Shown here: one piece after another, positions 27,000-47,577 of the stretch | How positions within the stretch are numbered: the first letter of the stretch is position 1 | Layout: every line of letters begins with the position of its first letter | Virus record (IMG/VR): IMGVR_UViG_3300036766_002289 | Location: 1 to 64,000 of that record | Length of the DNA: 64,000 nucleotides | Reading direction: 5' to 3' (one strand) | Notes under the pieces: model-generated | What the model was told of the DNA's origin: nothing | Databases searched by the model: none | Seen by the model: only the letters and a program-made list of their open reading frames with translations | Made by a program: the position numbers and the translations under genes

Positions 27000-27742
27000 A
27001 CAAGAAATATTGGCTTTGGGAAAAATAGAAAACGATCAACAGTTGGACGAAGCTGTTGATTTGTTAGATGAATATATTATGGATAAGTTTGATACTTTAA
27101 ATGCGACTGAGCTTAAGGAATTAGAAATTCTTTCTGATCTTATTTATGAGTATGAAGAACATACTGATATTTTGAACCGTCCTTACGAGATTGGCGATGG
27201 TGGAATATGCTCGTAAATTATGATGAAGTGATGAGACAGATAAAGGTTAGGGCAGCTTTGAATAGATTGTCGTTTGAAGAAATTGAATGGGTTAGAGATG
27301 ATGGAACTAAAATTGAGTTTGATAAAAGACTCGCAGAGGAATGGAAGTTTTTTGGGCTTAGTAATGTCAATTTTCCAGAATTGGTTCTTTCAAGGGTTGT
27401 GGCTGGAGAACAGAAAGAACTCTTAGAAGAATTAGTATGGAAGATTGATAGTTGACAATTGTGCGGCATTTCTGCGATAATATAGGAAGAAAGCTTAGTT
27501 GTACTGACATACATAGGTAAACGGAGAAAAAAAATGAATCTTGTCAAAAACTCAATGTATAAAGTTAAACATACTCACACAGATCACCCAGGTAGAATTG
27601 GTAGATTTGAATTTCTAGGTGGTCCAAGAGCGGAATTTATTCTTTTGTCTGATTACACCGACCCATTGCGTTTATTTGCAGTTGGTCTATATGACATAGT
27701 TGACTTTGATCCTAAAGTTGATAATGTTGTGGAGTAATACAA

Positions 27743-28279
27743 ATGCCACGTCTAAAGTGGGTAACTGTCAATGAGTATGGAACTCCTTGGCTTAAGGCAT
27801 CCAATGTCGTAAATTTGGACATAATGGATTTATGCGAGGGTAGGTTTTGGGGCGGGCATCAAATTTACATTGCCATTAATTTCTCTATTCATAAAAGAAA
27901 TTTCGAAAAAGGACCAGATGATTGGTCACATCAATTATTAGCCCCAAATGGTGTCCACATCTATCTTCACAGTGTAGAAGAAGGCAAGGAACTTGCAGAA
28001 ATTATCTATGCTAGAATCTTAGTCTCATTAGTACCCAAGGAAACGCCTTTAATTAAGTCTTTATTAATGAATAAAGCCAAGCATAAAAAAGCCAAGTTGG
28101 AGGCATTACTTAATAAGTGGGATGTAAGTGGGGAGGTTTATTATTCAAATAAGTATCCAAAAGGGTGGATGCATGTTTGGAAGCCAGGTCACTCACCACA
28201 AAGATTAGGTTTTGATTATGCTCAAGCTGTAGATTTGATTGAAAGTGGAGTAATGCATTTAATGGCTTACAATAGGTGA
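27743..28279 (+). CDS. hypothetical protein
   Basis: 178-aa ORF with SD. Confidence 0.55.
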   Translation: MPRLKWVTVNEYGTPWLKASNVVNLDIMDLCEGRFWGGHQIYIAINFSIHKRNFEKGPDDWSHQLLAPNGVHIYLHSVEEGKELAEIIYARILVSLVPKETPLIKSLLMNKAKHKKAKLEALLNKWDVSGEVYYSNKYPKGWMHVWKPGHSPQRLGFDYAQAVDLIESGVMHLMAYNR

Positions 28280-28603
28280 CACAGTGACAGAAAATAAAGC
28301 GTTTTTGATGCGAAAGCAAATTAGACTTTTAGTGTTGAAATATTTATTAACCCTAAACTATAAGGGTAAAGGACTGGTCGTAATAGACGGTGAAAAATTA
28401 ATGGATGAGTGTAAGATTACACCACACCAAATGCGGAGAAGTTTGGGTGATTTGTGCAAAGGATTGTCATTGTATATACAGATTCATCCTGATTCATTTG
28501 TTGCGAAATGGAAGATTTCAGAACCTAGTTTGAAACAAGTTGCAGCGGCTTTAGACATTGCAATGACCGATGGTAATTGTACTAGTTGGAATCCAGAGGA
28601 AGT

Positions 28604-29533
28604 ATGAACCTATTCGATAAACTTGCGGCAGAAGAAACAGCTTTCTTCAATTCTCAATTATTTTCCCCTGTTCTCAAGGGAAAGCCAATTAGAGTACGTA
28701 TTGCTGGAATCATCGTAACCCTTAGTGTTACTAAGCCTAAGAATTTCGAAGGTTGGGGTGTTTTTGCACCTATATCCGCTAAAACCGCTCGTTTCGTTCG
28801 TGAACCAAATATGACCGAAAAGCAAAGTTATTTTAACTTATTCCCAGCATTAAGACTTATTTTGTGTCGTCATAGTAATGACCAATGGTTCGGTATCCCC
28901 GCCAATCAGTCTGATACTAGATTCAAAATTACTGGAACCGTACCAATCCAACTTTGTACTGAAGTACAAATGTTTGATATGGTTAAGGTTCGTTTTGATG
29001 GGACTAATATCTGGTTTGAACAAATTGATCCCCGACATAGCCTAAAGCATTCTGCATATATGCGTGAATCGGTTATTAAATTCCTAGAAGCTCCAAAGCT
29101 TGAACTTTCAGGTTTAACTATCGAAGAACGCGATGCATATTTAATTGCATTGAATGACGCTTTGGCTGCGGACGCAGAAGCAAAGCGTGACAAGCAAGAA
29201 GAACGTATCCAAAAGGCGTTGGCATTAACTGGTGCCACATATCAAAGCTATATTGAACGTGGTGACACATTTACCATTGAATTTATGGTCGGACGTGAAC
29301 GCCATCGTTCAGTAGTCAAAAAGGAAAATCTTGCCGTTGAATCTGCTGGTATTTGTCTTGCTGGTACAGATCGTAACTTTGATCTTCAAAGCTTGGTTGG
29401 GGTTATTAGAGAAGGTCAACGTAATCGTAGAATTGTTCGCGTTGGGGAAAATCGTCAATTTGGTAATCCTAATGACTATGGTTATGAACAAGAAGACTAT
29501 GATCGTCAACTTGGAGATGATGACTATGACTAA
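28604..29533 (+). CDS. conserved-looking hypothetical protein; candidate E2-like conjugating enzyme
   Basis: C-terminal domain with AGICL (compare the E2 active-site GxICL) followed by FDLQSLVGVIRE helix; near JAB, ThiF and Ubl genes. Confidence 0.45.
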   Translation: MNLFDKLAAEETAFFNSQLFSPVLKGKPIRVRIAGIIVTLSVTKPKNFEGWGVFAPISAKTARFVREPNMTEKQSYFNLFPALRLILCRHSNDQWFGIPANQSDTRFKITGTVPIQLCTEVQMFDMVKVRFDGTNIWFEQIDPRHSLKHSAYMRESVIKFLEAPKLELSGLTIEERDAYLIALNDALAADAEAKRDKQEERIQKALALTGATYQSYIERGDTFTIEFMVGRERHRSVVKKENLAVESAGICLAGTDRNFDLQSLVGVIREGQRNRRIVRVGENRQFGNPNDYGYEQEDYDRQLGDDDYD

Positions 29534-30299
29534 GAAACTAGTACTAGGTTGTTTTTGCATGGCTATTTTGGCTAGCTGTTTGTTTATTGTCTTTGCACCA
29601 ATTAATGCAAATAAACTACAGCAGACAGAGCATAAACATAAGCCAGGTCAATTTGGCGGTTTTATCATGGAATTAGGTAAAGATAACTACCACTTGGAAG
29701 TTTCTTTAGGCAAAGATGGCGTAATTACGATTTATACGCTTGGCAAAGATGAAACTAGAGTTATTTCTGTAGAGAAACAAGTTATAACCGCCTATTTGAA
29801 GGATGATAAATTTGATTTAATGCCTAGTCCCCAAGCTGGCGATGAAGACAAAACTTCCAGGTTTATTGGTAAATTGCCAGCCAAGTATTTGAGCGAAGGT
29901 GAGATTAGTATTATTTTTAATATCGTTATAGAAGGGCAACGGTTTAGGGCTAGGATTTTAATTACTCAATTACCTCAAACCGACTTGTCGAGTGCTGAAG
30001 AGAAGAAACTTTATTTAACGCCAGGTGGCCTTTACACTGAACAGGATATCATTGCAAATGGGAAGACTTCCGCTTCTAATAAGTTTAAGGATTTTGTTCC
30101 ATCCCATGATCTAAAGCCTAAGAAAGGCGACCGAATTTGTCCTATCACTCTTACTAAAGCCAATCCAAAATGTACTTGGATTATCAACGGTAAAGAATAT
30201 TGGTTCTGTTGTCCACCTTGCATCGAGGAATTTCTTATTTTGGCTAAGGAAAAACCTGAACAAGTCAAATTACCTGAAGAATATATTAAAGGAGAATAA
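29526..30299 (+). CDS. secreted protein with His-rich motif and C-terminal YHS-like CP..FCCxxC domain
   Basis: signal peptide, EHKHKPGQFGG, CPITLTKANPKC..YWFCCPPC. Confidence 0.65.
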   Translation: MTKKLVLGCFCMAILASCLFIVFAPINANKLQQTEHKHKPGQFGGFIMELGKDNYHLEVSLGKDGVITIYTLGKDETRVISVEKQVITAYLKDDKFDLMPSPQAGDEDKTSRFIGKLPAKYLSEGEISIIFNIVIEGQRFRARILITQLPQTDLSSAEEKKLYLTPGGLYTEQDIIANGKTSASNKFKDFVPSHDLKPKKGDRICPITLTKANPKCTWIINGKEYWFCCPPCIEEFLILAKEKPEQVKLPEEYIKGE

Positions 30300-30300
30300 C

Positions 30301-30753
30301 ATGAAAAGAGAGCATTGTTGGGTATTGTTGGGTAGTGTTAGGGAGAATTTATGGTTTGGGCGGCGAGCTAAAATGACTCGTGGTGCCCCTTGTAGTGTTG
30401 ATTTTAATGCAGATTATGTTATCAATCGTGAAGAGACTAAGGGCGATGTAATCGGCTGGTTACATACGCACCCAGGTATGATTGCCAGTCCAAGTAACCG
30501 TGACCATCGCACAATGAAGGCATGGGTTCTTGCATTAGGCCACCCCTTGGTTTGTGCGATTGCTGGCGTAGATGGATTGCGTGCTTATTGGTATATGGAT
30601 GATGAGTCTGAACCGATTGAATCTGCGGTATGCGTTAAGCTAGCTAATTTCATTGTTGGTGTTACTAATCCTGTTTGTTGTGATAATTTTGACCAGTTGA
30701 TAAATAAGTGTGTATCTTGGGACGAAGCAGAAGAAAAATTAGGACTTAAGTAA
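30301..30753 (+). CDS. JAB/MPN+ (Mov34) metalloprotease
   Basis: VIGWLHTHP....PSNRD JAMM motif HxH-x7-S-x2-D. Confidence 0.85.
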   Translation: MKREHCWVLLGSVRENLWFGRRAKMTRGAPCSVDFNADYVINREETKGDVIGWLHTHPGMIASPSNRDHRTMKAWVLALGHPLVCAIAGVDGLRAYWYMDDESEPIESAVCVKLANFIVGVTNPVCCDNFDQLINKCVSWDEAEEKLGLK

Positions 30754-30830
30754 TTGGTTAGTTCACTCCCGTTGGCAACGCTGCCTTTGAGCAGGTGATA
30801 GGAGTGGATTAGCCTTTTTAGGAGCATATC

Positions 30831-31331
30831 ATGAGTCGTTATTTTGTTTCGATTTCTGTTGAAGAATTAAAGTCAAAAGTCGATGCTTATTTGGACGATG
30901 ATTCTAATATAAGGCATTTAACGCCTATTATTAGTAAGGATTTAGATAAAGTTAAATTCGATACAGAGAATATGGAGTCGGAGTCTGATTATGGTTATGG
31001 TCACGCCGAGGATTTAGTTGGCTATCATGTCCTTGAAAATGGTATGCCTATTTTGGGAGTTACAGCAGGCGGCGATTGGGAATGGCCAATATTTTTCTGT
31101 ATTTATTTTGATGGCAAAAAGCTTCGTGGTTATATTCCAGAAAAAGGTAATACTTGGAATACTGACACAAAAAAAGCCTATGGAAATGATGATGGTGCTG
31201 ACTTAAAAAATGCCAAGAAACGTTGGCCAATCCAGTATCCAAAAGATACTACTGATACTGAAGTCGAGCCATATGGTGATCTTGATTTAATGATTGAGGA
31301 TATTACAAATCGTATTATCAAAAAAGTCTAA
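30831..31331 (+). CDS. hypothetical protein
   Basis: ORF with SD; GGDWEWPIFF..Y.DGKKLRGYIP motif. Confidence 0.6.
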   Translation: MSRYFVSISVEELKSKVDAYLDDDSNIRHLTPIISKDLDKVKFDTENMESESDYGYGHAEDLVGYHVLENGMPILGVTAGGDWEWPIFFCIYFDGKKLRGYIPEKGNTWNTDTKKAYGNDDGADLKNAKKRWPIQYPKDTTDTEVEPYGDLDLMIEDITNRIIKKV

Positions 31332-31351
31332 AATGAGTCATACATAATTGT

Positions 31352-32293
31352 ATGACAGTAGAATTTTTTCCAGGCCCTGATTCGGATTTTTGGACAGTGC
31401 CAGCGGGTGTTTTTTCTGTTTTTGTAGAAGCAGTTGGCGGCGGTGGTGGTGGTTCTAGTGGTCATGACGGTGATTCATTACAATTTGGCGGTGACGGTGG
31501 TGGTGGCGCTGGCTATGGTGCAGCTGTTTTAGCTGTTATACCTGGAGGTGTTTATAGTCGATATTCATCAGGGGGTGGAGATAGTAGTGATTTCGGCCCA
31601 GCCATAGTTCGTGGAGGCGGCGGCGGGGGAGGTCCATTCCCTTGGTCAGGTGGGACGGATAATATAGGCACCATTACAGTCAACGGTGGAGATGGTGCCC
31701 CATCTCCTATGATTGTTTTTGGCAATGGTGGCGTGGGCGGCGCATCCGCTGTTGGTGGCAGTGCTGGTACAGCTGGAATTGGTGCTGTTCCAGGTCCAGC
31801 TGGCAATGGTGGTGATGGGGGTTTTGCAGGTGGAGGTGGTGGGGGTGGAGGTGGTGCCCTTGTTGGTGCTGGCAGTGGAGGCGCAGGCGCGGTTGGCTAT
31901 ATTCGACTTACTTATACCATCATTTATTTAGGTTCCCCAAGTCCTTCAATAGACAATCCTGGCTCACCTATAGTGCCAGGCAATACAATAACTATTCCTG
32001 GTACTCCTGACACTGAGAGTTGTCTTGACACGATTACAAGTGTTACTTTTAATGGAATACCAGCATCTTTTTCTATAGTGGACGGTAATCTTATAATCAT
32101 TGTACCGCCTGGAGTTTCTGGGAATGGTATATTAGAAGTGACTTCAGACTGTGGAGTTATGGATTTCGCTTATATCGCTGAAAATGCAGTTGGTTGTTGT
32201 AAAACAGTAGTTTATTGCTGTAAAGTTTGTGCCCCAACAAGTTCCTGCCCCCTTGGAATATTACTTATGGAACTTCTTTTAAAAAGTGACTAA
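31352..32293 (+). CDS. glycine-rich protein with C-terminal IPT/TIG-like domain (putative virion fibre/decoration)
   Basis: WTVPAGV..VGGGGGG, Gly repeats, SVTFNGIPASF..IIVPPG; paralog of the next gene. Confidence 0.7.
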   Translation: MTVEFFPGPDSDFWTVPAGVFSVFVEAVGGGGGGSSGHDGDSLQFGGDGGGGAGYGAAVLAVIPGGVYSRYSSGGGDSSDFGPAIVRGGGGGGGPFPWSGGTDNIGTITVNGGDGAPSPMIVFGNGGVGGASAVGGSAGTAGIGAVPGPAGNGGDGGFAGGGGGGGGGALVGAGSGGAGAVGYIRLTYTIIYLGSPSPSIDNPGSPIVPGNTITIPGTPDTESCLDTITSVTFNGIPASFSIVDGNLIIIVPPGVSGNGILEVTSDCGVMDFAYIAENAVGCCKTVVYCCKVCAPTSSCPLGILLMELLLKSD

Positions 32294-32300
32294 ATAATGC

Positions 32301-33248
32301 ATGACTGTATTGTTATTTCCTGGTCCAACTTCGACTACTTGGACAGTGCCCCCTGGTGTTATTTCTGTTTTTGCTGAATGTTATGGTGAGGGTGGTCTCG
32401 CTTCTAATGGAGCAACAGGAGAAGGCCCAAATGTTGCGGGCGGCGACGGTGGCGGTGGTGGTGGCTATGGGGCTTCAACTTTAGTCGTGATTCCAGGTGA
32501 AGTTTATAATGTTACAGCAGGCAGTGGCGGTAGCGCAACTGATTCTAATTTTAGTGGCCCTGGTGGAACCGTTGATGGTAGCGGTGGTTTATTTCAAGCT
32601 CCACCTAATCATGGTACTGGCAGTGGTGATGTTACTGATGATGGGGGTGATGGCATAGCAGGTGCTTTTCCAGCTGGTTTTAGTGCTGGTGGAGATGGTG
32701 GCGCAGGTGGTGGTCCATCAGGTGGCAGTGGTGGTACTGGTGGTGCAGGTCATGATGATGCCGCTGGCGATGCGGGTAGTCCTGGTGGTGCTTATGGAGG
32801 GGGCGGCGGCGCAGGTGGGGGTGGCTTTCTAGGTGGAGGTGCAGGGGCAAATGGTGCAATCGGTGTTGTAATACTAACTTTTAGTTCGATTTATTTACTG
32901 AATCCAGACCCACCAATAGATACTGCACCTGGAATTACTCCTGGTGATATTATCACTATTCCAAGTGTCCCAGATACTGAAGATTGTCTTAATACAATTG
33001 TAAGTGTCACTTTTAATGGAGTGCCAGCATCTTTTTCTATAGTAGGCGGTAATCTTGTAATTACTGTCCCATCTGGCATTACTAGTGGCACATTGGAAGT
33101 TATTTCTTCAGAATGCGGGTCTATGACTTTTTCTTATATTGTTAATAGTGGTAATGTAGTGGCAATTTGTTGCAATGTATGTGCTGTAACTAGCAGATGC
33201 CCACCCTGGATGGTTAGATACGGTAGCTCTATAAGAACAAGAGGTTGA
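32301..33248 (+). CDS. glycine-rich protein with IPT/TIG-like domain, paralog
   Basis: same architecture as 31352..32293; TAAATA upstream. Confidence 0.7.
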   Translation: MTVLLFPGPTSTTWTVPPGVISVFAECYGEGGLASNGATGEGPNVAGGDGGGGGGYGASTLVVIPGEVYNVTAGSGGSATDSNFSGPGGTVDGSGGLFQAPPNHGTGSGDVTDDGGDGIAGAFPAGFSAGGDGGAGGGPSGGSGGTGGAGHDDAAGDAGSPGGAYGGGGGAGGGGFLGGGAGANGAIGVVILTFSSIYLLNPDPPIDTAPGITPGDIITIPSVPDTEDCLNTIVSVTFNGVPASFSIVGGNLVITVPSGITSGTLEVISSECGSMTFSYIVNSGNVVAICCNVCAVTSRCPPWMVRYGSSIRTRG

Positions 33249-33292
33249 CATTTAGACATTTCGTGCTATAGTGCCCTATAGGGGAGGATACA

Positions 33293-33940
33293 ATGGCAAA
33301 TAGCAAATTTCATCATGAAGAAATCTATCGTGGTAAGGATTTAGCCGCAAGACTAGGTGTTCCAATCACCGTCTGTGGTGCAGGTGCCATCGGTAGCAAT
33401 CTAGTAGATAATCTTACCCGTCAAGGATTTAGCAAAATTACCGTTATTGACATGGATCGTGTTGAAGTTCATAATCTTAATACTCAGATTTATGCTGAAG
33501 CCGATGTTGGTGCGCTCAAGGCAGACGCACTTAAAAACCGCGTGTTTAGAAACATTGGCGTGGAAATTGAAGCAGTCAACAAGGAAATGTCAGCTGCCAA
33601 TGTAAAGCAGCTTCTCAAGAAGGCTAGTATCCTTGTTGACTGCTTCGATAATAACAAAGCACGGCAATTAGTACAGAATCATGCAAGAGAGAAGGGTAAT
33701 CCTTGCCTACATATTGGTCTTTATGAAGATTATGCCGAGGTTATGTGGGATAAGAAATATCGTGTTCCCAAGGACCAAACACAAGGCGATGTATGTGATT
33801 ATCCGCTTGCTCGTAATATTGCCATGTTAGCGGTCATTGTAGCAACTGAAGAACTCTTAAGCTTTCAGTTGGAGGAGCCACCAAGGTTCCAAGATTGGTC
33901 AATTACTCTAAAAGATTTAGCAATTAAAAAATTCTCTTGA
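33293..33940 (+). CDS. ThiF/MoeB/E1-like adenylyltransferase
   Basis: VCGAGAIGS, IDMDRVEVHNLNTQ, DVGALKA, VDCFDN; DVCDYP candidate catalytic Cys; own TTGACA..TATAGT promoter at 33245-33272. Confidence 0.9.
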   Translation: MANSKFHHEEIYRGKDLAARLGVPITVCGAGAIGSNLVDNLTRQGFSKITVIDMDRVEVHNLNTQIYAEADVGALKADALKNRVFRNIGVEIEAVNKEMSAANVKQLLKKASILVDCFDNNKARQLVQNHAREKGNPCLHIGLYEDYAEVMWDKKYRVPKDQTQGDVCDYPLARNIAMLAVIVATEELLSFQLEEPPRFQDWSITLKDLAIKKFS

Positions 33941-34080
33941 TTGGCAAGAAATTTGTGATAAGATTATAAAAATGTTACTGTAATAACAGACCAAGATAGA
34001 GACGCATTTGGATTTACGTTAAACACCTTGGTAAGTTGAATTATTTTTATTAGTGTTGGACACTAGAAAGGTTTACTAAA

Positions 34081-34173
34081 ATGTCTAAGGAAAAGTCTCC
34101 TAAGAAGGAAACAAAGAAGCCATCAAAGAAGGCGGCTACTAAGAAGGCAGCAGTTAAGACTCCAGCCAAGTAA
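34081..34173 (+). CDS. 30-aa Lys/Ala-rich basic peptide (histone H1-like)
   Basis: MSKEKSPKKETKKPSKKAATKKAAVKTPAK; SD aaagg; terminator at 34182-34215. Confidence 0.55.
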   Translation: MSKEKSPKKETKKPSKKAATKKAAVKTPAK

Positions 34174-34229
34174 ATGGAACCAATCCCCGCCAAAATTTGG
34201 CGGGGATTATTTTTTAAAAGGAACTCAAT

Positions 34230-34913
34230 ATGAAAAAGTTTTTATTATCAATGATTGCAGTTTTAATCGCGCCCATTACATTGTTTGCAGGTGAAATTAC
34301 CGTCACAGGCACTAGTGTCGTATCCATGCCAGCTACGACAGGCTATATCACAGTAGCCGTAGTCACAGAGGCAAAAACTCCAGCAGATGCACTAGCCCTA
34401 AATAAGGATGCAACGACTAACATTTTTGCACTTTTGAAGAAATTGAATATTAAAAAAGAGGAAATGCAAACTCAAGGTTTTCAATTATCCCCTAAGTTCG
34501 TTTATATTCAAAACCAAGAAGCAACCCTTACGGGGTATACAGTTAAATATACTTTGCAGATAACTGTATGCGATATAGCTAATACAGGCAAGGTATTGGA
34601 TAGCATTGTTAAGGAAGGTGCCAATCGAGTTGAAGGGGTAAGATTTGGTGTTACAGATGATAAAATGCAAGAAGCTTTGACTAAAGCACGAACGGAAGCT
34701 GCTAAGAATGCCAGAGAAAAAGCTTTGTTATTCGCATCAGCTTTGAATCCTAATGCAAAATTGAAACTAAAGACACTTTCTGAGCATAGTGCAGATACAG
34801 GTAATAGAGTATATTCTAATATGGCAGACCGTAGCCCAGGTGGAAGCACCAATATTGAAGGTGGTGAAATTTCAGTAAAAGTTCAAGTTCAAACAGTTTG
34901 GGACTGTGATTAA
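34230..34913 (+). CDS. SIMPL (DUF541) domain periplasmic protein
   Basis: signal peptide; ITVTG, GYTV, GANRVEGVRF, A..NAREKA, GEISV..QV. Confidence 0.85.
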   Translation: MKKFLLSMIAVLIAPITLFAGEITVTGTSVVSMPATTGYITVAVVTEAKTPADALALNKDATTNIFALLKKLNIKKEEMQTQGFQLSPKFVYIQNQEATLTGYTVKYTLQITVCDIANTGKVLDSIVKEGANRVEGVRFGVTDDKMQEALTKARTEAAKNAREKALLFASALNPNAKLKLKTLSEHSADTGNRVYSNMADRSPGGSTNIEGGEISVKVQVQTVWDCD

Positions 34914-34975
34914 TTGAAAAAAAAGACACGGTTAATAACCGTGTCTTTTTATTTGTACTTATCTAAATAAGGTAA

Positions 34976-35842: not shown

Positions 35843-36098
35843 TGCTCTGATATACTAAGGACTCCTTTCCTTCGGTGGCTTATTTTAATCTCCGCGAAAT
35901 AAGTTGCCTCATGACCGCCTTGGGTTATTCCAGGGCGGTCAGCTTTTATAGCTTAGTTGTACCAGGAGAGTCAGAAAGATTTTGGTAATCAACTTGACAA
36001 AGAAGAAATCGGTGGTATATTAGGGTAACGCAGTTGAGAAAAAGAATTTTTGAAAATTATCTTGCAAAAAAAAGTTTCGGCTGCGTATATTAATATGA

Positions 36099-36398
36099 AT
36101 GGAAAGAAGAAAGCGTGATGCTCTATGGCATCGTAAGCAACACGAATCGGTAAAGATCGAGATATTTAAAACGTTAGGGTCGAAGTGTAATATCTGTGGG
36201 TTTGATGATATTCGTGCTTTATGTATCGACCACATAAATGGCGGTGGTCTTTTAGAGAGGGCTAAACCAAAAGGCCAATATTACGTTGTGATCTGTAAGA
36301 AGTTAAGAGATAGTTGTGAAGATTACCAATTACTTTGTGCAAATTGTAACTTAATTAAAAAGGTAGAGAGAAAAGAAGGACGTAAAAGGGTATACTGA
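36099..36398 (+). CDS. HNH-like endonuclease
   Basis: CNICG..LCIDHINGGG..YQLLCANCN. Confidence 0.75.
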   Translation: MERRKRDALWHRKQHESVKIEIFKTLGSKCNICGFDDIRALCIDHINGGGLLERAKPKGQYYVVICKKLRDSCEDYQLLCANCNLIKKVERKEGRKRVY

Positions 36399-37334: not shown

Positions 37335-37456
37335 CTATAAAAGCCTGGATAAATCGAGGGCAAGGTGAACTGTCATGAGACATTACTCCTAAATGGTCCA
37401 GGTGATTCCAAAAGAATCCCCATACCCCGATAGCTTAGTTGTACCAAGAACGTTTT

Positions 37457-38630: not shown

Positions 38631-38639
38631 CTGTTTTAT

Positions 38640-38713: not shown

Positions 38714-38718
38714 CTTTT

Positions 38719-39254: not shown

Positions 39255-39261
39255 TTAGAAT

Positions 39262-39332: not shown

Positions 39333-39339
39333 CTTTTAT

Positions 39340-39411: not shown

Positions 39412-39420
39412 CTTACATTA

Positions 39421-39493
39421 GCCTCGTTAGACTTCTGGGAAGTCACCACGCTTTCAACGTGGAACAAGATGGGATCGAAACCCATACGAGGTA
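39421..39493 (+). tRNA. tRNA-Glu(TTC)
   Basis: CCACG-CTTTCAA-CGTGG; T loop ATCGAAA. Confidence 0.8.
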
Positions 39494-39496
39494 CTT

Positions 39497-39964: not shown

Positions 39965-40720
39965 AATTTGAAAAAGAGAACGTTTTTCTTAATTCTCGCG
40001 GCTGGATTCAATGTCTGGGAACATTTGTAGATCATAACGGGAAAGAATATGTGTCAGAAGCATGGGCACATCCTATTACGCTTAAAAAGTATAGTACAGG
40101 TGCTTTTGTTGTCGCAACAGAAGATTATCTTCGTGAAAAAGGTTGGAAAAGTATTCTCGAAGTTGAGCGTGCTGGGGAAAAGAAGTGGAACAAGATTTAT
40201 AAGATGGGAAGGTGTCAAAGCCCTGTAACAAAAAGGATTTATTGCTATCTTGAAGCAGAATGGTATGCAATTGAACGTAATTTCGATGAAAGTGATTATC
40301 CTTTTGGAATGTCCCAACATACTATTGAACTAAACAAACTTATCAAGGATTTTAAAAAGGATGAATATTTCATCTGGTTTCATCGGAGTTCAGAAGGACA
40401 GCATGTAGGAGTATACGGAGAAACTTATATTACTGAATTTTGGACTCAAGATGAAATCAAAACGTATAAAATAGACGAGGCAGCAAAAATTTCAAAGGTA
40501 ATGATTGAAGCATTAGTATCTCCTGATAGGGCCAGATGCGCTTTGAATTGGTCTCAAGATGATGTTGAAAAGGCAATAGAACGTGCTAGTATCGTATAGT
40601 CGGTGTCAACATGAATAGAAGTGAATTGTGATGCTTTGACTGATACATACAAATCTAAAAATTTGGGCAATGGAAGGGCTAAAAGAAGAGAGAGATATCG
40701 CACAGGTAAAAGTTATTAAT

Positions 40721-40793
40721 GCCGCTTAAGCAAAATGGTATGCGCCTGTTTTGTAAGCAGGAAAATAAGTGAGTTCGATTCTCACAGGCGGCT
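40721..40793 (+). tRNA. tRNA-Thr(TGT)
   Basis: CCTGT-TTTGTAA-GCAGG. Confidence 0.8.
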
Positions 40794-40818
40794 CTGTTCT
40801 TTAGCTTAGTTGTACCAA

Positions 40819-40856
40819 TGGGAACGTTATGACACAGTGGGAACGTTATGACACAG
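40819..40856 (+). repeat. 19-bp tandem duplication
   Basis: TGGGAACGTTATGACACAG x2, spanning the start of ORF 40848. Confidence 0.9.
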
Positions 40857-41133
40857 AACGAAATGTTAGACCGAATTGTGGAGATTTATGAAAATAATCC
40901 TTCTCCACTCCCTGAAGAACTACTCCCTGAATGGCGAAAGCTTAATGATGATTTGAGGGAACTAGATGAAGAAAAATGTTATGGTCTTGGGTTCTATCAT
41001 AAAGGGTATACGATAAATTTACATGGCAGTAAGATATTTTTAAATAAAATGTCGAAAGAACAGTATTGTGATATGTTGGATATGTTTCGTGGCAAGATAA
41101 CGGTTAAGGAGTTTAATAAGAAGTGGTAAGAAT

Positions 41134-41205
41134 GCCTCCGTGATCGTAATGGTAACGAATCAGACTCTTAATCTGAGAATCCGAGTTCAACTCTCGGCGG
41201 GGGTA
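41134..41205 (+). tRNA. tRNA-Lys(CTT)
   Basis: TCAGA-CTCTTAA-TCTGA. Confidence 0.85.
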
Positions 41206-41210
41206 CTAGT

Positions 41211-41753
41211 ATGCCCTTAACTATGAAAAAGTGTAATAAATGTGGTCTAGAAAAAACAGAATTTCATAAAAATACATCTTACTGTAAAGAGTGTAATATT
41301 GTTAGAGTTAAAGAGTGGGCAATACTTAATAAAGAAAAAATAACTAAAAACAGCGGTATCTATATAAAAGCTAAGCACTTTTTATTAAAGGCTATACTAG
41401 ATGATATTAAACATGAGAATGGGTGTAGTTTTTGTGGAGAGAATGATGCGTGCTGTTTAGATTTTCATCATATTGCTAATAAATCTGATAATGTTTCTAA
41501 ACTTCAACGAGATAAGAATGTTAAAAAGATTTGTGAAGAGTTGAATAAGTGTATCATAGTATGCGCAAACTGTCATCGAAAATTACACGATGGGAAAATA
41601 AATATTGGCGTTAGAAAGCTATTTGACATTAGTTTAGAAGAATTTATTACTAGAGTAAGTAACAGAGCAGCAGAATTTCTTCCCGATGAAAAACGGGTTA
41701 GAAAATGGTTAATTGCTCCTAAAGCTGTAGCGGCACAAGCACCTGTCTCTTAA
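41211..41753 (+). CDS. HNH endonuclease (tRNA-associated family)
   Basis: CLDFHH..ELNKCIIVCANCHRKLH; 3' end overlaps the next tRNA. Confidence 0.85.
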   Translation: MPLTMKKCNKCGLEKTEFHKNTSYCKECNIVRVKEWAILNKEKITKNSGIYIKAKHFLLKAILDDIKHENGCSFCGENDACCLDFHHIANKSDNVSKLQRDKNVKKICEELNKCIIVCANCHRKLHDGKINIGVRKLFDISLEEFITRVSNRAAEFLPDEKRVRKWLIAPKAVAAQAPVS

Positions 41754-41798
41754 ACAGGGGTCGTAATGACATTCCGAGTTCAAGTCTCGGTAGGGGCA
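41715..41798 (+). tRNA. tRNA with CTT (Lys) anticodon and long variable arm
   Basis: CCTGT-CTCTTAA-ACAGG; variable hairpin GTC-GTAAT-GAC; A73. Confidence 0.75.
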
Positions 41799-41800
41799 CT

Positions 41801-41872
41801 GTGGGTGAAGCCAAACGGTGCGGCATCTGTGTGTGAATCAGAATATAATGGGTTCAACTCCCATCATCCACC
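41801..41872 (+). tRNA. tRNA-His(GTG)
   Basis: loop GTGTGAA; C73. Confidence 0.7.
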
Positions 41873-41873
41873 C

Positions 41874-42284
41874 TTAATCGTCGATTTCTTCTATGGTATG
41901 TTGCTCTGTGCGATTAGCATCATTGGCGGCTTTAGCAGCAAGTTCATGATATCTTTTTTTAAGTTTTTCGATTTCTTCTTCAGTGAGGTTTTCGATATGG
42001 AGCAAACGGTTACTAGCTCCTTTATGGGATACAAGTAATTCGTCTAACTTTAAATGAAGTGCTATTTGCTCTTTATTTTGAGTTCTTTGAATAAGGAAGA
42101 CCATTAAGAAGGTAATGATGGTGGTAAGGGTATTGATGAATAGGCTGTGAGAATCGCTCCAGTTGAAAAATGGACCTGAGCATAACCAGATAAGCACAAT
42201 GAAAATGGCCATAATGAAGGCTGATGTACTGCCAGCCCAATTGGTTATCTTTTTGGCCATCAGTTCAAATTTGCTTATTCGCAC
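41874..42284 (-). CDS. low-affinity iron permease (Fet4-like) family membrane protein
   Basis: GSTSAF..W..SGP.F.WSD...INT.TTIITFLMVFLIQ.TQN....HLKLDEL. Confidence 0.85.
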   Translation of the reverse strand: MRISKFELMAKKITNWAGSTSAFIMAIFIVLIWLCSGPFFNWSDSHSLFINTLTTIITFLMVFLIQRTQNKEQIALHLKLDELLVSHKGASNRLLHIENLTEEEIEKLKKRYHELAAKAANDANRTEQHTIEEIDD

Positions 42285-42313
42285 GGTTTATATATGGTTA
42301 ATAATTTTTAAAC

Positions 42314-42386
42314 GGGGAAGAAGCTCAGTTGGGAGAGCAACCGCCTGTCGAGCGGAAGGGTGCGGGTTCGACTCCCGTGTTCCTCG
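42314..42386 (+). tRNA. tRNA-Asp(GTC)
   Basis: CCGC-CTGTCGA-GCGG; G73. Confidence 0.8.
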
Positions 42387-42396
42387 CCTTATTTTT

Positions 42397-42488
42397 TGCG
42401 GTGTCATCTAATGGCAAGATACGGGTCTCAAGGGTCAAACAGCCCATAAATGAAGCCTGAAATGTAGGTTCGACTCCTACCGCCGTAA
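42397..42488 (+). ncRNA. tRNA-like RNA with about 21-nt insertion in the anticodon loop
   Basis: TGCGGTG/CGCCGTA, ATCT/AGAT, CGGGT..GCCTG with internal GGGT/GCCC hairpin, GTAGG-TTCGACT-CCTAC. Confidence 0.65.
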
Positions 42489-42573
42489 TTATAGACCGTA
42501 AGTATTGGTGTAAAAGAGCAGATTAAGTCTTCTCACGAAGCGTATAAGTCTCTTTAGCACAGCGGTCGCGTTT

Positions 42574-42648
42574 AGGATTGTGGGCCAGCCTGGAGTGGCC
42601 GTCTCCCTGTCACGGAGAAGATCGAGGGTTCAAATCCCTTCAATCCTG
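42574..42648 (+). tRNA. tRNA-Asp(GTC)
   Basis: TCTCC-CTGTCAC-GGAGA. Confidence 0.9.
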
Positions 42649-42681
42649 CTGAAATAAGTTGAACCTTACTCTATATATGGT

Positions 42682-43293
42682 ATGCCATATAAAGATAAGG
42701 TTAAGCAGAAAGAATTTTCAAAACGTCATTATTTGTTGAATAAGGAAGTTTATCAACAATCCAGAAAACAAAATCGTAATAATCGCCATATTTGGTTCAA
42801 TGGAGTAAAATCACAACTAAAATGTTGTCAATGTGGAGAAAACGATTATCGCTGTTTAGATTTTCACCATAGGGAATTTGAGGAAAAAGTATTTGGAATT
42901 TCTGAAGGTGTAAAATCAGGTTATAGTGAAGAGAAAATTATAAAAGAAATTTCTAAATGTGATGTGTTATGTGCTAATTGTCATAGGAAAAAACATGCAA
43001 GCGTAAGATTGCCTGCTGACGGGTACCACAGGGAACGAGTTGGCAAAAACATAAAATGGCTAAGAGAATTTAAAAGAAAATTAAGTTGTGTTGATTGCGG
43101 CATAAAAGATGAATTTGTTCTAGATTTTCATCATCTTCGAGATAAAGATGATACTATTTGTAGATTAGCGGGAAATGGTTGTTCCGTCGAACGACTCTTA
43201 GAAGAAATTGCTAAATGCGAGGTTATATGTGCTAATTGCCATAGAAAGCGACATAATGGTAATGTATGGTCTGAAGATTCAGTGAAAAATTAG
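42682..43293 (+). CDS. tandem double-HNH endonuclease
   Basis: two LDFHH...EI.KC.V.CANCHRK.H domains. Confidence 0.85.
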   Translation: MPYKDKVKQKEFSKRHYLLNKEVYQQSRKQNRNNRHIWFNGVKSQLKCCQCGENDYRCLDFHHREFEEKVFGISEGVKSGYSEEKIIKEISKCDVLCANCHRKKHASVRLPADGYHRERVGKNIKWLREFKRKLSCVDCGIKDEFVLDFHHLRDKDDTICRLAGNGCSVERLLEEIAKCEVICANCHRKRHNGNVWSEDSVKN

Positions 43294-44504
43294 GAGCAGA
43301 TTTAAAAATACTTTAAGGGGGAACAATGAAACTGCCAGAACCAACCATAGCAGATTTGAGACGTGCTAAGGAATTTATTGGTGAAGAAAGTTTGCTGCTT
43401 GCTCAGTGGGCTGCGGAGGAACGCAGGCGAATTCTTTCAATTTTAAGGGGCGTTAATTTAACTGGTGGTCCTTCTGGTTGGGAAATAGCCGATTATTTGA
43501 AAGAAGAAACTGATAATGAGATATAGTAAGGAAAAAAAAGTTATTACTTATTACGATAAATTAATTAGGGGCGACCAATTCATTGGAAATCCCCAAGGTG
43601 GTTGGATATTTGTAAAAACTGATATTAAAGGTATTGCGGTTAGGCTTGCTGATGGCGGAACTGTTCAGTGGGAAGACAATGCAGAAGTGCATAAAGTGCA
43701 GTCTGCTTCCTAATTGAGATATAGGTATTAAAACTATATACCTATATGCCAATGTATCCTTGTCTTTGTGTCCCTTATAATCCAGGTACTCCTGTCCCAT
43801 GTTCGATGCCTGGAACAGGTGATGCTGGTGGAATTTTGGAATTACAGTTGCTTAATGTTCAAATGGGGATGATGGGAGTTTTTGACGGTGGTTGTGGACT
43901 GTTTTTCTACACACATGTACTAGCCTATAATGTAAGTTTTGGCCCGTCAGGGGCTTATCAGATGCAGGTTTTTGATAAGTTCCAGGGCGTGTGGAATTTA
44001 GTAATGTTTAGTGGAGTTTTATACCAAACTACAGATGCATTAAATGCCTACGGGCCTTTTTTACCACTTGACCAAATTACTTTGTTTTGGAATAATGTAA
44101 AGTTACCACCTACTAATCCAAATGGTGGATTTTTATTGAATCCAGTGTGATTTATGGCAAAGAAAAAAGAAGAATATAAGTTTGCAAAACTTGACACAAT
44201 TCACAATGTTTACGAAATGACTGAAATCCCAGAAGGCGCAACTCATGTTGAATCAGAAACGGATTACAGTAATTGCTATTACGAGAGCGATAGCCCAAGT
44301 ATCAAGTTAACTTTTTACAAGAAAGAAAAAGCATGAGAAAGATAGCTGCGATTCTTGAATTAAATGCTCAAGAACTCAAGTATTTGCTTCACGGTCTTAA
44401 ACAGTTAGATATGCATTACAATGCTGGTTCCAGAGATTTTAATCGTGAAGAAATGCATGAGAAACTTCAACAGAAACTTGAAAAGGCTTCTGTTGATTTG
44501 AAAT

Positions 44505-44577
44505 AGCTCTACTGTTGGTGGGTACAACGGGTGGCCTCCAAAACCACTGCTTGCGGGTTCGATTCCTGCTAGGGCTG
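44505..44577 (+). tRNA. tRNA-Trp(CCA)
   Basis: loop CTCCAAA; A1-U72, G73. Confidence 0.75.
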
Positions 44578-45158
44578 CTTATAGAAAGGTGATTAAATGA
44601 CAATTTCAATAGACATTGGTAAGTTTGAGGCCGAGATTGAATATATAAGTGCAATCGGTAAACGCAGCCGCAAGGTGGAATTAGAAGTTATGTGGCATAG
44701 TTGTTGGGTGTATCAAGTAACCTACTATAGGCCAAGAGATGCTGAAGATCATGTTGTAGTCGTAACTAAAGACTGGTATCCACCCAACATCAATATTAGT
44801 TTCACTCCAGAACAATTTGATAAGGTAGTAGAATTATATCCTTTGGCTCCCAAAAATGAGAGAGATCAATGTTATAAGCCATTTTATGAAGATTATGATT
44901 TGAGTAGGGGCATGTTTGATTTTGGGGATGATGTTCTATTTCAAGCGTTCAAAAGCCCACAACCGACCGATGATGAAAGAGTATATTTAGTGCGACATTG
45001 TTTTTCTTATGGCACACCTACACCTGATACAGCTGTTCTTGGCTTACATGTTGATGATCTAAAAAAATTGAAAGAATTGCTTGATAGTAAGAAAAATGAA
45101 ATTTTTTATTCTGGATGTAAAATATCTTGGCCATCTAAAATATTAGGTGATCTTTAAT

Positions 45159-45231
45159 TCCTCAGTAGCTCAATAGGTAGAGCGCAAAGCTGTTAACTTT
45201 GATGTTCCTCGTTCGAGTCGAGGCTGAGGAG
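45159..45231 (+). tRNA. tRNA-Asn(GTT)
   Basis: CAAAG-CTGTTAA-CTTTG; canonical cloverleaf. Confidence 0.9.
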
Positions 45232-45734
45232 CTTATGAATCTTACATGGTTTGGTAAAATGGGCATGGTGTTTATGATAGCATCTTGTATGCTAGGTGTT
45301 GTGTCGATGGCAACTAGGTCAGTAACCATGTTATGGTGTTCTGCCGCATTTAGCGTCATTGCTGGCGTATTAATGACATTTGAAGCAACTAAACACAAGA
45401 GATAAAATTATGAACTTAATATTTATGTTAACTTTGTGTTGCGGTGAAATCCCTACTGCCGAAGATACTAATCTTCAAACTAAAAAGGCGATTGTCGAGA
45501 TTCAGAGAAAAGCAGAAAAGGATTTTGAATCTTATATTGAGTTGAATATAAGGGACGCAGTAAGGAAAGGGAAATATACCACATCTTTGATTATTCAGGA
45601 AGATTTTAATGTTCTTCCTTATGTGAAGGCTGTATTAATGCCAAAGTTAGAAAAACTTGGGTATAAAGTTGAATTAAAGATTCCTCCGAAAGATTCGATT
45701 GGTAATCCAACTTTGTATATCAGGTGGGAGTAGT

Positions 45735-45953
45735 TTATTTTTCTGCGAATGGTGGACGGGCAGTACCAGGGAAATCTTGATTTAACGTTCCAAGTGGTTG
45801 TGGTTTCTTGATTTGATATTGGGCTGTTTGGCCCTTTTTGATAGGGATCATTAAATTAGGATTGATTGGGACTTGCATAGGATTTGGGCCGTTTGGAGTC
45901 ACCATTTGTTGTGGGCCAGGTTCTAAGCCTTCAAGCCATTGTCTGAAGTTCAT
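45735..45953 (-). CDS. small Pro/Gln-rich protein (MNFRQWLE N-terminus)
   Basis: coupled to upstream ORF; shared N-terminal motif. Confidence 0.55.
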   Translation of the reverse strand: MNFRQWLEGLEPGPQQMVTPNGPNPMQVPINPNLMIPIKKGQTAQYQIKKPQPLGTLNQDFPGTARPPFAEK

Positions 45954-46501
45954 TGAGGTAATCCTGTTCTTAACTTTTTAGCGCCTGCTGGTTTGTAAAT
46001 TCCAGTGCCAACGTATTGTGTTGTATCTGGTTGCATTGGTGGAGAGCTAAAATATTGGTTAGTATTGCCGACTGTTTGTGGTGTTAGTGTCATTGTTGGG
46101 GAATACCCTAATGACCTACCGAATTCAACTGTTTTTCTGCTAATTGGGTCTTTTTGTAATACACCCATTACGTAATTCCTGGCGAGTGTTCTTCCTGCTT
46201 GTCGTCTATCGCCTATTTTGGCTTTAGAAGCTATTTTTCGCATTGTTCCTTGAATAATTTCTTGTCTGTTAGTAGGGTTGCTTAGGTAGTCGGCGGCGTA
46301 GTGTAACCAGGAAAAAGGTGGTGGGCCTTGTTGAGAATCTGGTCCCCTTCTCATGGTTCGTGTAGGTTCGGTACTCATTTTAACGATGGCATTGTATGCA
46401 GCTTCTGCATCCTCGGCTGTTTCCGCTTTCGAGTTACCTCTTGTATAGACGCCTAAATTTATACCTTGTGCTTCACGAATTTCAATCCATTCTTTAAACA
46501 T
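45950..46501 (-). CDS. hypothetical protein (MFKEWIE N-terminus)
   Basis: TATAAATA just upstream on the minus strand. Confidence 0.6.
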   Translation of the reverse strand: MFKEWIEIREAQGINLGVYTRGNSKAETAEDAEAAYNAIVKMSTEPTRTMRRGPDSQQGPPPFSWLHYAADYLSNPTNRQEIIQGTMRKIASKAKIGDRRQAGRTLARNYVMGVLQKDPISRKTVEFGRSLGYSPTMTLTPQTVGNTNQYFSSPPMQPDTTQYVGTGIYKPAGAKKLRTGLPQ

Positions 46502-46543
46502 ATGGTATTTATATAAAATTTTTGATTTTTGTTGAATAATTTA

Positions 46544-46594
46544 GCCCTCATAGTACAATGGCAGTATAACTGAGTCCGATTCTCAGTGAGGGCT
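46544..46594 (+). ncRNA. mini-tRNA lacking the anticodon arm
   Basis: GCCCTCA/TGAGGGC acceptor, TAC-AATGGCA-GTA D arm, CTGAG-TCCGATT-CTCAG T arm, nothing between D and T arms. Confidence 0.65.
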
Positions 46595-47046
46595 TTGGAT
46601 AATGGAAGAATTATATTTCTGTATGCACTTGACGGAAAATGAGCATTACATAGCTGAATGGGATTTTCAAGAAAAATGTGAAGTATTGGGACTGACTATC
46701 GTTTATTACAGGAAGTTGAAGGAAGGTCATGTGCCGATGTATCGTGAGATTAAGGTGAAGGGTGAACGGCTCGCTATAAATCAATTTAAGAAATTCTTGA
46801 AAGAGAAATTTTATACAGAGCAAATTGAGAGAAACCCGCACAAAGTTTAGCCTTTTTTTGGAGAATAATTATGTTTACAGAGAAAGAAATCCAGACGATT
46901 AAACTTGCTTTAAAGGCATTTAAATTGCAGATGTGTTTTGATTCAAGAAGCACTACTAAGGATTTTAATCCAGTCCTTTTAGATGAGTTAACTTCTCAAA
47001 TGGAAAATTTTTATAAGACTTTATTGGGAAAAGTCGATAACCTTTT

Positions 47047-47117
47047 GCCACTATAGTATAATGGCATTACGTCTGTTTCGTAATCAGAAATTGAGGGTTC
47101 GATTCCTTCTAGTGGCT
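47047..47117 (+). tRNA. tRNA-Thr(CGT)
   Basis: loop TTCGTAA; cloverleaf. Confidence 0.85.
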
Positions 47118-47119
47118 CT

Positions 47120-47227
47120 GTGGAATTAGTGTAAATGGACAGCACGTAGGAGAAAGCAACAGTAAAGCCTTTTTAGGTGAAAATGATGCTCATCCCTGAA
47201 GTGACGGTTCGAATCCGTTATTACACC
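47120..47227 (+). ncRNA. tRNA-like RNA with greatly expanded anticodon arm
   Basis: GTGGAAT/ATTACAC, GTG/CAC D arm, GACGG-TTCGAAT-CCGTT; about 50-nt anticodon region. Confidence 0.6.
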
Positions 47228-47577
47228 TGACTATAGCTTAGTTGTACCAATGGTGGTGTTCCGATTTTTCAATAAAAAAGGAGGCTTCACATGCGGTTCT
47301 CATTGGCTATGGTATTTTTGCTTTTTGTGTCCCCGTGTTTCGCTGATAATTTTCTTTCTGTTCTAAAGAAAGATCAGAAAATCGTCTTGAGGGAAGGTCC
47401 ACAGGGCTATCAAATTGTCATTTACAAGAATTTCGGCGTTGAGCCTGCGTCATTTAAGGTTATTGAGGTTGGTACAGACTATATTGTGGTTGAAGATGCG
47501 GTTGGTTTGAACGAAATTCGTATTCCGATTTACTCAATTAAGTCGATTACAACGACTAAACTTCCAAAGGTTAAAGA

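What the first reader, a model, noticed from the sequence alone, without database searches (positions are those of the whole stretch)
27492..47249. Exact 16-nt motif TAGCTTAGTTGTACCA repeated around the tRNA region
Identical copies at 35949, 37431, 40802 and 47234, plus a 13-nt core at 27492 just after a sigma70-like promoter. All are intergenic and on the same strand; several follow a tRNA or hairpin. Non-palindromic, so it may be an RNA-level signal (antitermination or processing), a phage-sigma promoter element or a recombination site.
Basis: seen in the sequence. Interest (0 to 1): 0.6.

Follow-up and report, generated by a model that had tools for sequence, protein, structure and literature searches.

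The report
Giant-phage promoter repeated about 100 times
The repeated 16-letter word is the core of a roughly 20-letter signal, most likely a transcription start signal, that an uncultured 390-kb phage places in front of about 100 early-type genes and tRNA clusters; it is probably read by the host RNA polymerase carrying a phage-made sigma factor.

Summary
There are four exact copies and one degenerate copy in the window, all on the + strand. The window is the first 64 kb of a 390,039-bp phage record, which holds 96-101 copies on the + strand and 1-7 on the other.

The full element is about 20 nt, wATAsCTTAGTTGTACCAA, with TAGTTGTAC invariant and no -35-like box. About 70 copies lie in one 36-kb block of small genes. 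The element sits just upstream of + strand genes and tRNAs. In 22 copies an ATG lies exactly 10 nt after GTAC, often without a Shine-Dalgarno sequence.

The genes it precedes are of early or middle type (rIIA, RNA ligase, kinase, tRNAs), never virion genes. I found no phage RNA polymerase and no MotA/AsiA, but three sigma genes.

Two relatives have the same system with AGCTGTAC. Across 33 orthologous promoters the core is 100% conserved except one base, T here and C there.

Only genomes with the sigma gene at window 11801-12283 carry the motif.

Best reading: a phage-specific middle or delayed-early promoter that also bounds shuffling gene cassettes.

The parts
27489..27508 (+). Degenerate promoter copy (core AGCTTAGTTGTAC, then TG instead of CA). 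It lies 26 nt upstream of ORF 27534-27737.
   Evidence: matrix score 21.9. An orthologous copy precedes the 97%-identical ORF in relative G001.
27452..27481 (+). Sigma70-type promoter TTGACA-18-GATAAT, in tandem just upstream of the degenerate copy.
   Evidence: It belongs to a family of about 25 T4-early-like host-type promoters.
35912..35941 (+). Strong terminator-like hairpin (-24.4 kcal/mol) ending 5 nt before the next motif copy.
35947..35966 (+). Promoter copy with the exact 16-mer, directly behind the terminator.
   Evidence: score 30.4. G001 has a copy in the same context, a hairpin with a T-run before it (place 42469).
35994..36021 (+). Sigma70-type promoter TTGACA-16-TATATT, 28 nt after the motif copy. 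It precedes ORF 36099-36398 and tRNA-Met.
37429..37448 (+). Promoter copy with the exact 16-mer. It ends 8 nt before tRNA-Pro (37457) and heads a tRNA array running to 38007.
   Evidence: score 31.5. An orthologous copy precedes the same tRNA in G001 (place 43695).
40800..40819 (+). Promoter copy with the exact 16-mer, starting about 7 nt after tRNA-Thr (40721-40794). It precedes ORF 40848-41129.
   Evidence: score 31.3.
47232..47251 (+). Promoter copy with the exact 16-mer, preceding ORF 47291-47581, which has a strong Shine-Dalgarno sequence.
   Evidence: score 32.6. An orthologous copy lies 50 nt before the 70%-identical ORF in G001.
11801..12283 (+). sigA: a 160-aa sigma factor with regions 2 and 4. 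Its nearest solved relatives are FliA/sigma-28 and WhiG. It is the candidate reader of the motif.
   Evidence: It is present in all three motif-bearing genomes and absent from three motif-less relatives.
11709..11737 (+). Sigma70-type promoter TTGACT-17-TATACT, 63 nt upstream of sigA. It predicts early expression of sigA by the host enzyme.

Best explanation
Claim. The 16-mer is the core of a phage-specific promoter about 20 nt long. Its consensus is w-A-T-A-s-C-T-T-A-G-T-T-G-T-A-C-C-A-A.

Proposed mechanism (inferred).
- The host RNA polymerase with its own sigma70 first transcribes genes behind about 25 T4-early-like promoters. One of these genes is the phage sigma factor sigA (window 11801-12283).
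- Core polymerase carrying a phage sigma, most likely sigA, then starts at the roughly 100 motif copies.
- The start point probably lies at a purine 2-7 nt after GTAC.
- This turns on the non-structural middle or delayed-early genes, the tRNA arrays, and a 36-kb block of about 70 small single-gene cassettes.

Consequences. Each cassette carries the same roughly 20-50 nt of promoter and leader, and sometimes a G+C-rich hairpin before them. The copies therefore also act as homology patches at which cassettes are exchanged and reordered between related phages.

Shown here: the motif, its census, its geometry, the gene classes it precedes, its conservation, and its co-occurrence with sigA.

Inferred: that it is a promoter, where transcription starts, and which sigma reads it.
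For: (1) Strand and place. There are 96-101 copies on the coding strand against 1-7 on the other. No other non-coding word is over-represented; the other frequent k-mers are coding repeats.

(2) Geometry. The copies lie 10-50 nt upstream of + strand starts. An ATG sits at exactly +19 from the T of TAGTTGTAC in 22 of 101 copies. 34% of copies have their first ATG in the +17..+24 window, against 5% for random positions. tRNAs begin at +19 to +21. The same geometry holds in relative G001, with 25 copies, and in W01.

(3) Purine after the core. The positions just after GTACC are 87-96% purine and invariant A in G001, as expected near a start point.

(4) Terminators. Several copies directly follow strong terminator hairpins: 35949, 299455, 307133 and 309450, and two in metagenome locus L038. 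An RNA-processing site placed there would rarely be transcribed.

(5) Gene class. The motif precedes rIIA, a T4-type RNA ligase, a P-loop kinase, an SprT-like protein, an AAA ATPase, a phosphoesterase and tRNAs. There are no copies in the virion-gene blocks at 70-140 kb and 320-390 kb.

(6) No phage polymerase or MotA/AsiA found. There are no Pfam hits for T7-like or multisubunit RNA polymerase. There is no DFDGD motif in six frames. There is no MotA or AsiA. There are three sigma genes.

(7) Footprint. In 33 orthologous G000/G001 promoter pairs, identity is 29% upstream and about 100% in the core. One position is T in every G000 copy and C in every G001 copy. The downstream proteins are only 63% identical.

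(8) Phyletic pattern. The motif and sigA are both present in G000, G001 and W01. Both are absent from G002, G003 and the complete G004. G004 still has sigB and sigC homologues, and G002 and G003 have sigC homologues.

(9) Order of expression. sigA has a host-type promoter. No copy of the motif lies in the 130 nt upstream of sigA in any of the three genomes. sigA lies before the first motif copy in map order.
Against: No transcript data exist. No RNA run holds the phage, so the start site is not mapped.

The element is unusual for a sigma-dependent promoter. It is a contiguous block of about 20 nt conserved up to and beyond the presumed start, which resembles single-subunit polymerase promoters. 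sigA has a region 4, yet no -35-like box is conserved.

Only about 22% of copies have a strong upstream hairpin, which is not significantly above background (p = 0.055). Most copies could therefore also be reached by read-through transcripts.

The motif-sigA co-occurrence rests on six genomes. The three carriers form one clade that also share rIIA, so the pattern is phylogenetically confounded.

The region 2.4 helix of sigA is nearly identical in G000 and G001 despite the T/C switch. The only correlated change is an RE/ER swap in region 4.2.
Confidence: 0.72

Rival explanations
1. RNA-level signal. The motif is transcribed as part of long read-through RNAs. It is then the binding or cleavage site of a phage or host ribonuclease, or of a translational factor. 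This would create defined 5' ends 9-10 nt ahead of the start codons and release the tRNAs.
For: The strict strand bias and the fixed distance to ATGs and tRNA 5' ends fit a cleavage site as well as a start site. Most copies lack a terminator upstream. Some copies lie just downstream of a sigma70-type promoter, so they would be transcribed (27452/27491 and 142097/142159). Many ATGs at +19 lack a Shine-Dalgarno sequence, so something else must recruit ribosomes.
Against: No conserved secondary structure accompanies the motif. The downstream hairpin has no covariation support, and the downstream regions fold less well than controls. Several copies sit right behind strong terminators. The dense block has no host-type promoters at all that could feed a long precursor. 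No dedicated endoribonuclease was identified; only selected proteins were scanned, so this is weak.
Confidence: 0.12
2. The motif is read by an unrecognised phage-encoded RNA polymerase, or a polymerase packaged in the virion, rather than by host core plus a phage sigma. The promoter would then work like those of T7-type or N4-type enzymes.
For: A contiguous block of about 20 nt conserved through the presumed start, with a single position switched between relatives, is the pattern seen in T7/T3-type promoters (own knowledge). The ORFs of 600 aa or more that were scanned include several with no family assignment.
Against: There are no Pfam hits for T7-like, Rpb1 or Rpb2 domains. There is no DFDGD motif and no paired T7 motifs in six frames. 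Three sigma genes imply use of the host core enzyme.
Confidence: 0.08
3. The motif is the binding site of a phage transcription activator or repressor that works with host sigma70 (MotA-like sigma appropriation). Alternatively, its primary role is as a site for cassette recombination.
For: The AGCTTAG part loosely resembles the T4 MotA box TGCTTtA (own knowledge). Copies often sit in tandem with sigma70-type promoters. Cassette order differs between strains, with breakpoints at the motif.
Against: No -10 element follows at the required distance, and an ATG at +19 leaves no room for one. The invariant part is TAGTTGTAC, not the MotA-box-like part. There is no MotA or AsiA homologue. A pure recombination site would not need a fixed distance to start codons or restriction to one gene class. 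No recombinase was linked to it.
Confidence: 0.06

Closest known systems
Single-element promoters of the phage phiEco32 sigma factor gp36 (tAATGTAtA, start 6-8 bp downstream; PMC8948821)
   Same: Both are phage-specific, have no -35 box, and consist of one conserved block close to the start. In both cases the phage has no polymerase of its own and encodes a sigma. Both contain a TGTA core.
   Different: The phiEco32 element is 9 nt and there are six mapped promoters. Here the block is about 20 nt with about 100 copies. gp36 lacks region 4, whereas sigA has one.
PeSL cassettes (promoter-early stem-loop) of T4-type phages (PMC2839356, PMC4122927)
   Same: Both are repeated composite regulatory cassettes made of promoter, leader and Shine-Dalgarno sequence, often with a GGGG...CCCC hairpin. 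Both flank small orphan genes in a hyperplastic block, and gene cassettes are shuffled between related phages at these repeats.
   Different: PeSL promoters are strong sigma70-like -35/-10 promoters. This motif has neither box. Only about a fifth of copies have a strong hairpin. Mini-circles are not testable here.
Promoters of T7-type single-subunit RNA polymerases (own knowledge)
   Same: Both are contiguous blocks of about 17-23 nt conserved up to the start. Related phages differ at single specificity positions across all their promoters.
   Different: No such polymerase gene is detectable, and there is no sequence similarity.
T4 middle promoters (MotA box plus sigma70 -10; PMC2988021 listed, details from own knowledge)
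   Same: The gene class is the same (rIIA, tRNAs, nucleic-acid enzymes). Both occur in tandem with early host-type promoters.
   Different: There is no -10 element, no MotA or AsiA, and the invariant bases are different ones.

Membership tests
Phage-sigma-dependent promoter class | Conserved element on the coding strand immediately upstream of a defined set of phage genes | tested here: met
   96-101 forward against 1-7 reverse copies, 10-50 nt before starts, and only before non-structural genes.
Phage-sigma-dependent promoter class | The phage encodes a sigma factor and no RNA polymerase of its own | tested here: met
   Three sigma genes. No polymerase domains or catalytic motifs.
Phage-sigma-dependent promoter class | Transcripts start a few bases downstream, and initiation depends on the sigma | not testable with these tools
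   No RNA runs hold the phage.
Phage-sigma-dependent promoter class | Motif and sigma co-occur across related genomes | tested here: met
   sigA and the motif are present in G000, G001 and W01 and absent from G002, G003 and G004. The sample is small and confounded by ancestry.
Host sigma70 promoter | TTGACA-like and TATAAT-like boxes 16-18 bp apart | tested here: not met
   No information content upstream of position -7 and no -10 box. Consensus sites are not enriched in the dense block.
T7-type single-subunit polymerase promoter | A cognate single-subunit polymerase gene in the genome | tested here: not met
   PF00940 gave no candidate, although the control genomes cannot contain this family either. 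No paired T7 motifs B and C were found.
T4 MotA-dependent middle promoter | MotA box near -30 plus a sigma70 -10 element; MotA and AsiA genes present | tested here: not met
PeSL regulatory cassette | Repeated promoter-plus-stem-loop units flanking small orphan genes in a hyperplastic region | tested here: inconclusive
   The dense block at 280-316.6 kb has about 70 units. Strong hairpins occur before about 22% of copies only.
PeSL regulatory cassette | The promoter is sigma70-like | tested here: not met
PeSL regulatory cassette | Recombination between units reshuffles cassettes | tested here: met
   In the block, only 14 of 23 orthologues are collinear with G001, against 10 of 10 outside it. 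Contigs of related strains join at motif positions. Homology to L041 begins at the motif.
Structured RNA signal (processing or antitermination site) | Conserved secondary structure with covariation | tested here: not met
   RNAalifold finds no consensus structure. The proposed stem scores no better than shuffles. There are no Rfam hits other than tRNA.

The most novel reading that the evidence does not exclude
A sigma-28-like two-domain phage sigma, or an unrecognised phage polymerase, recognises a contiguous element of about 20 bp that runs up to the start point, in the manner of a T7 promoter but on a host multisubunit enzyme. It would launch very short, Shine-Dalgarno-less leaders with a fixed 10-nt spacing from GTAC to ATG. 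Its specificity would have been re-tuned by one base in about 100 promoters at once between sister phages (T here, C in G001 and W01).
Probability: 0.15. Interest if true: 0.7.

Novelty: new member of a known kind. Interest (0 to 1): 0.4.

Why it matters
The motif gives a transcription map for an uncultured 390-kb phage and its relatives. It marks which roughly 100 genes form one regulatory class and names a testable sigma factor.

The complete one-base switch across 33 orthologous promoters offers a natural experiment on how a promoter and its reader co-evolve.

The motif-bounded cassettes show how giant phages can reshuffle small accessory genes.

The element and its sigma could also serve as an orthogonal expression pair if the pairing is confirmed.

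Tried and rejected
- Near-identity search of 6.5 kb of the window against GenBank phages: no match.
- Exact 16-mer in IMG/VR: only single chance hits.
- The same 16-mer in relative LR756511: chance level. That phage uses the AGCTGTAC variant instead.
- Other over-represented k-mers: they proved to be coding repeats of giant structural genes.
- Hairpin in the conserved leader (TTAGGGT...ACCCTAA): no consensus fold and no covariation.
- General enrichment of terminators before the motif: not significant.
- T4-type late box TATAAATA: not enriched genome-wide.
- MotA/AsiA mechanism: rejected.
- RNA evidence: no RNA runs. Read laying was given 6,000 letters, and only DNA contigs were available.
- Portal-based relatives G002-G007: no enrichment of the motif.
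- Motif strings in the literature: only unrelated primers.
- Scans of ORFs of 600 aa or more for a polymerase: only structural or packaging families, or nothing.

No alternative genetic code was used.
Full report
**Observation**

The 16-mer TAGCTTAGTTGTACCA occurs exactly at window 35949, 37431, 40802 and 47234. A 13-nt core occurs at 27492. All five are on the + strand. That is 5 matches at up to 3 mismatches against 0.73 expected, and no shuffle reached 5.
- one copy follows a hairpin of -24 kcal/mol;
- one starts 7 nt after tRNA-Thr;
- one ends 8 nt before tRNA-Pro;
- one follows a tRNA-like T-arm;
- the degenerate copy follows a TTGACA-18-GATAAT promoter.

**Scale**

The window is the first 64 kb of a 390,039-bp virus record from a sediment metagenome. 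Genome-wide counts are:
- 86 forward and 1 reverse copies at up to 2 mismatches, with 0 for the backwards control;
- 101 forward and 6 reverse copies of the core TAGTTGTAC;
- 96-99 forward and 1-4 reverse sites by weight matrix.

Aligning all copies shows a contiguous conserved block of about 20 nt, [not A]-A/T-T-A-G/C-C-T-T-A-G-T-T-G-T-A-C-C-A-A. TAGTTGTAC is invariant. Nothing is conserved further upstream, so there is no -35-like box. Copies are sparse from 27 to 280 kb and dense from 280 to 316.6 kb, with about 70 copies every 200-500 bp. There are none in the virion-gene blocks. All other over-represented words are coding repeats of giant structural genes.

**Anatomy**

Nearly every copy lies just upstream of a + strand start. 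Two classes stand out.
- Class 1: in 22 of 101 copies an ATG lies exactly 19 nt after the T of TAGTTGTAC, which is 10 nt after GTAC. It often has no Shine-Dalgarno sequence. 34% of copies have their first long-ORF ATG at +17..+24, against 5% of random positions.
- Class 2: the ATG lies at about +45..+50, behind a conserved leader (TTAGGkTGTrATT ... CTAAC-GGAG) and a strong Shine-Dalgarno sequence.

tRNAs start at +19 to +21. The two positions after GTACC are 87-96% purine. A putative leader hairpin has no covariation support.

Strong G+C-rich hairpins precede about 22% of copies, which is not significantly above background. Where present they abut the motif, and the motif's T-rich 5' half could serve as the terminator tail (inference).

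**Gene class**

The motif precedes rIIA, a T4-type RNA ligase, a P-loop kinase, an SprT-like protein, an AAA ATPase, a metallophosphoesterase, tRNA arrays and many small orphan genes. Portal, terminase and the giant structural genes have no copy.

**Transcription machinery**

I found no T7-like or multisubunit polymerase domains. There is no DFDGD catalytic motif in six frames. There is no MotA or AsiA.

There are three sigma genes:
- sigA: window 11801-12283, 160 aa, regions 2 and 4; its nearest solved relatives are FliA/WhiG;
- sigB: 160245-161072, 275 aa, regions 2 and 4;
- sigC: 78810-79136 on the minus strand, a weak match to T4 gp55-type late sigma.

The genome also carries about 25 host-type promoters resembling T4 early promoters, TT(T/G)ACA-N12-GTrs-TAnnnT. 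All are on the + strand between 18 and 270 kb, and none lies in the dense block. A similar host-type site, TTGACT-17-TATACT, lies 63 nt before sigA. Several of the early-type promoters stand in tandem with motif copies.

**Relatives**

*G001.* This is an IMG/VR record of 373 kb whose sigA is 81% identical. It has the same architecture, with 111 forward and 4 reverse copies of AGCTGTAC. Its consensus is ATAGCTTAGCTGTACCnAGT, and 25 copies have the ATG at the same distance.

*W01.* This is LR756511, 595 kb, with sigA 52% identical. It has 134 AGCTGTAC copies, including a dense block of small cassettes with the same geometry.

*Orthologous promoters.* Of 93 motif-driven ORFs here, 47 have a G001 homologue, and 33 of those keep the motif upstream. 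Over these 33 pairs:
- identity is 29% upstream, which is random;
- identity is about 100% in the core;
- one position is T in every copy here and C in every G001 copy;
- identity is about 40% downstream, and the encoded proteins are 63% identical at the median.

*Metagenome fragments.* A fragment (L041) shows the same pattern. The motif is identical, the spacer to the ATG has diverged but keeps its length, and there is no homology upstream. Another fragment (L038) has three copies in 1.2 kb, two of them behind terminators.

**Which reader**

Six genomes were compared.

| Genome | Motif enriched | sigA | sigB | sigC |
|---|---|---|---|---|
| G000 (this phage) | yes | yes | yes | yes |
| G001 | yes | yes | yes | yes |
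| W01 | yes | yes | yes | yes |
| G004 (533 kb, complete) | no | no | yes | yes |
| G002 (partial) | no | no | no | yes |
| G003 (partial) | no | no | no | yes |

G004 instead shows an ECF-type bipartite motif.

In all three carriers, no copy of the motif lies in the 130 nt upstream of sigA, and sigA lies before the first motif copy in map order.

This makes sigA the best candidate, but the sample is small and confounded by ancestry. The promoter-recognition helix of sigA region 2.4 barely differs between G000 and G001. The only change that tracks the T/C switch is an RE/ER swap in region 4.2.

**Cassette shuffling**

Outside the dense block, 10 of 10 orthologous motif-driven genes are collinear with G001. 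Inside it, only 14 of 23 are. Contigs of related strains from other sediment and freshwater runs break and rejoin at motif positions. This parallels the PeSL cassettes of T4-type phages, but with a promoter that is not sigma70-like.

**Conclusion**

The finding is real and is best read as a new phage-specific promoter class for middle or delayed-early genes. It is probably read by host core polymerase with a phage sigma, most likely sigA. It doubles as the homology patch of a shuffling cassette array.

The main rival is an RNA-level processing or translation signal. It cannot be excluded without 5'-end data.

The unusual points are these:
- the length and contiguity of the element;
- the fixed spacing to start codons that lack a Shine-Dalgarno sequence;
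- the complete one-base switch between sister phages.

Noticed in passing
Genome-wide; in the window at 18040, 21336, 22583, 24459, 33245, 35994, 47585, 53512 and 55780: A family of about 25 host-type promoters resembling T4 early promoters, TT(T/G)ACA-N12-GTrs-TAnnnT. All are on the + strand, and none lies in the dense cassette block. The relative W01 has 28 on its corresponding strand.
   Followed up: partly
G000 83.5-110 kb (outside the window): Giant ORFs of 2,482 and 1,428 aa and their neighbours carry many near-identical coding repeats (for example GCTTCAGGCACA and TATCCTTGGA). These account for all other over-represented k-mers.
   Followed up: partly
G000 91092 and 330283 (outside the window); window 3054 and 46513 (minus strand): The T4-type late box TATAAATA sits 4-7 nt before the ATG of large late ORFs. 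This suggests gp55-type late promoters giving nearly leaderless mRNAs. The box is not enriched genome-wide.
   Followed up: partly
Window 47119-47230: A tRNA-like 3' part (GGTTCGAATCC T-arm plus an acceptor-like end) lies directly before the 47234 copy. Neither ARAGORN (with introns allowed) nor Rfam calls it. It may be a tRNA remnant.
   Followed up: partly
Window 23312-23404: ARAGORN reports a 93-nt tRNA of undetermined identity with a two-base anticodon ('aa'), next to tRNA-Leu. Rfam does not report it.
   Followed up: no
G000 305-316 kb (L036): About 20 cassettes share a leader after the motif: TTAGGkTGTrATT, then CCCTAAC and GGAG. The relatives have similar TTGTrA and CTAAC-GGAG strings. 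The function is unknown, and no fold is supported.
   Followed up: partly
G004 (IMG/VR, 533 kb), 99-230 kb: A portal-related phage without sigA carries about 13 copies of an ECF-type bipartite motif, AAGTTTCCGAACC-N16-GTCTTCC. It looks like a different phage-specific promoter class.
   Followed up: no
G000 161041-161826: An HNH-endonuclease-like ORF overlaps the end of sigB.
   Followed up: no
G000 305102-305521 and 307511-308608: A P-loop kinase (AAA_33) and a T4 RNA-ligase-1-like gene lie close together in the cassette block. They resemble a tRNA-repair pair, and both are motif-driven with the ATG at +19.
   Followed up: no
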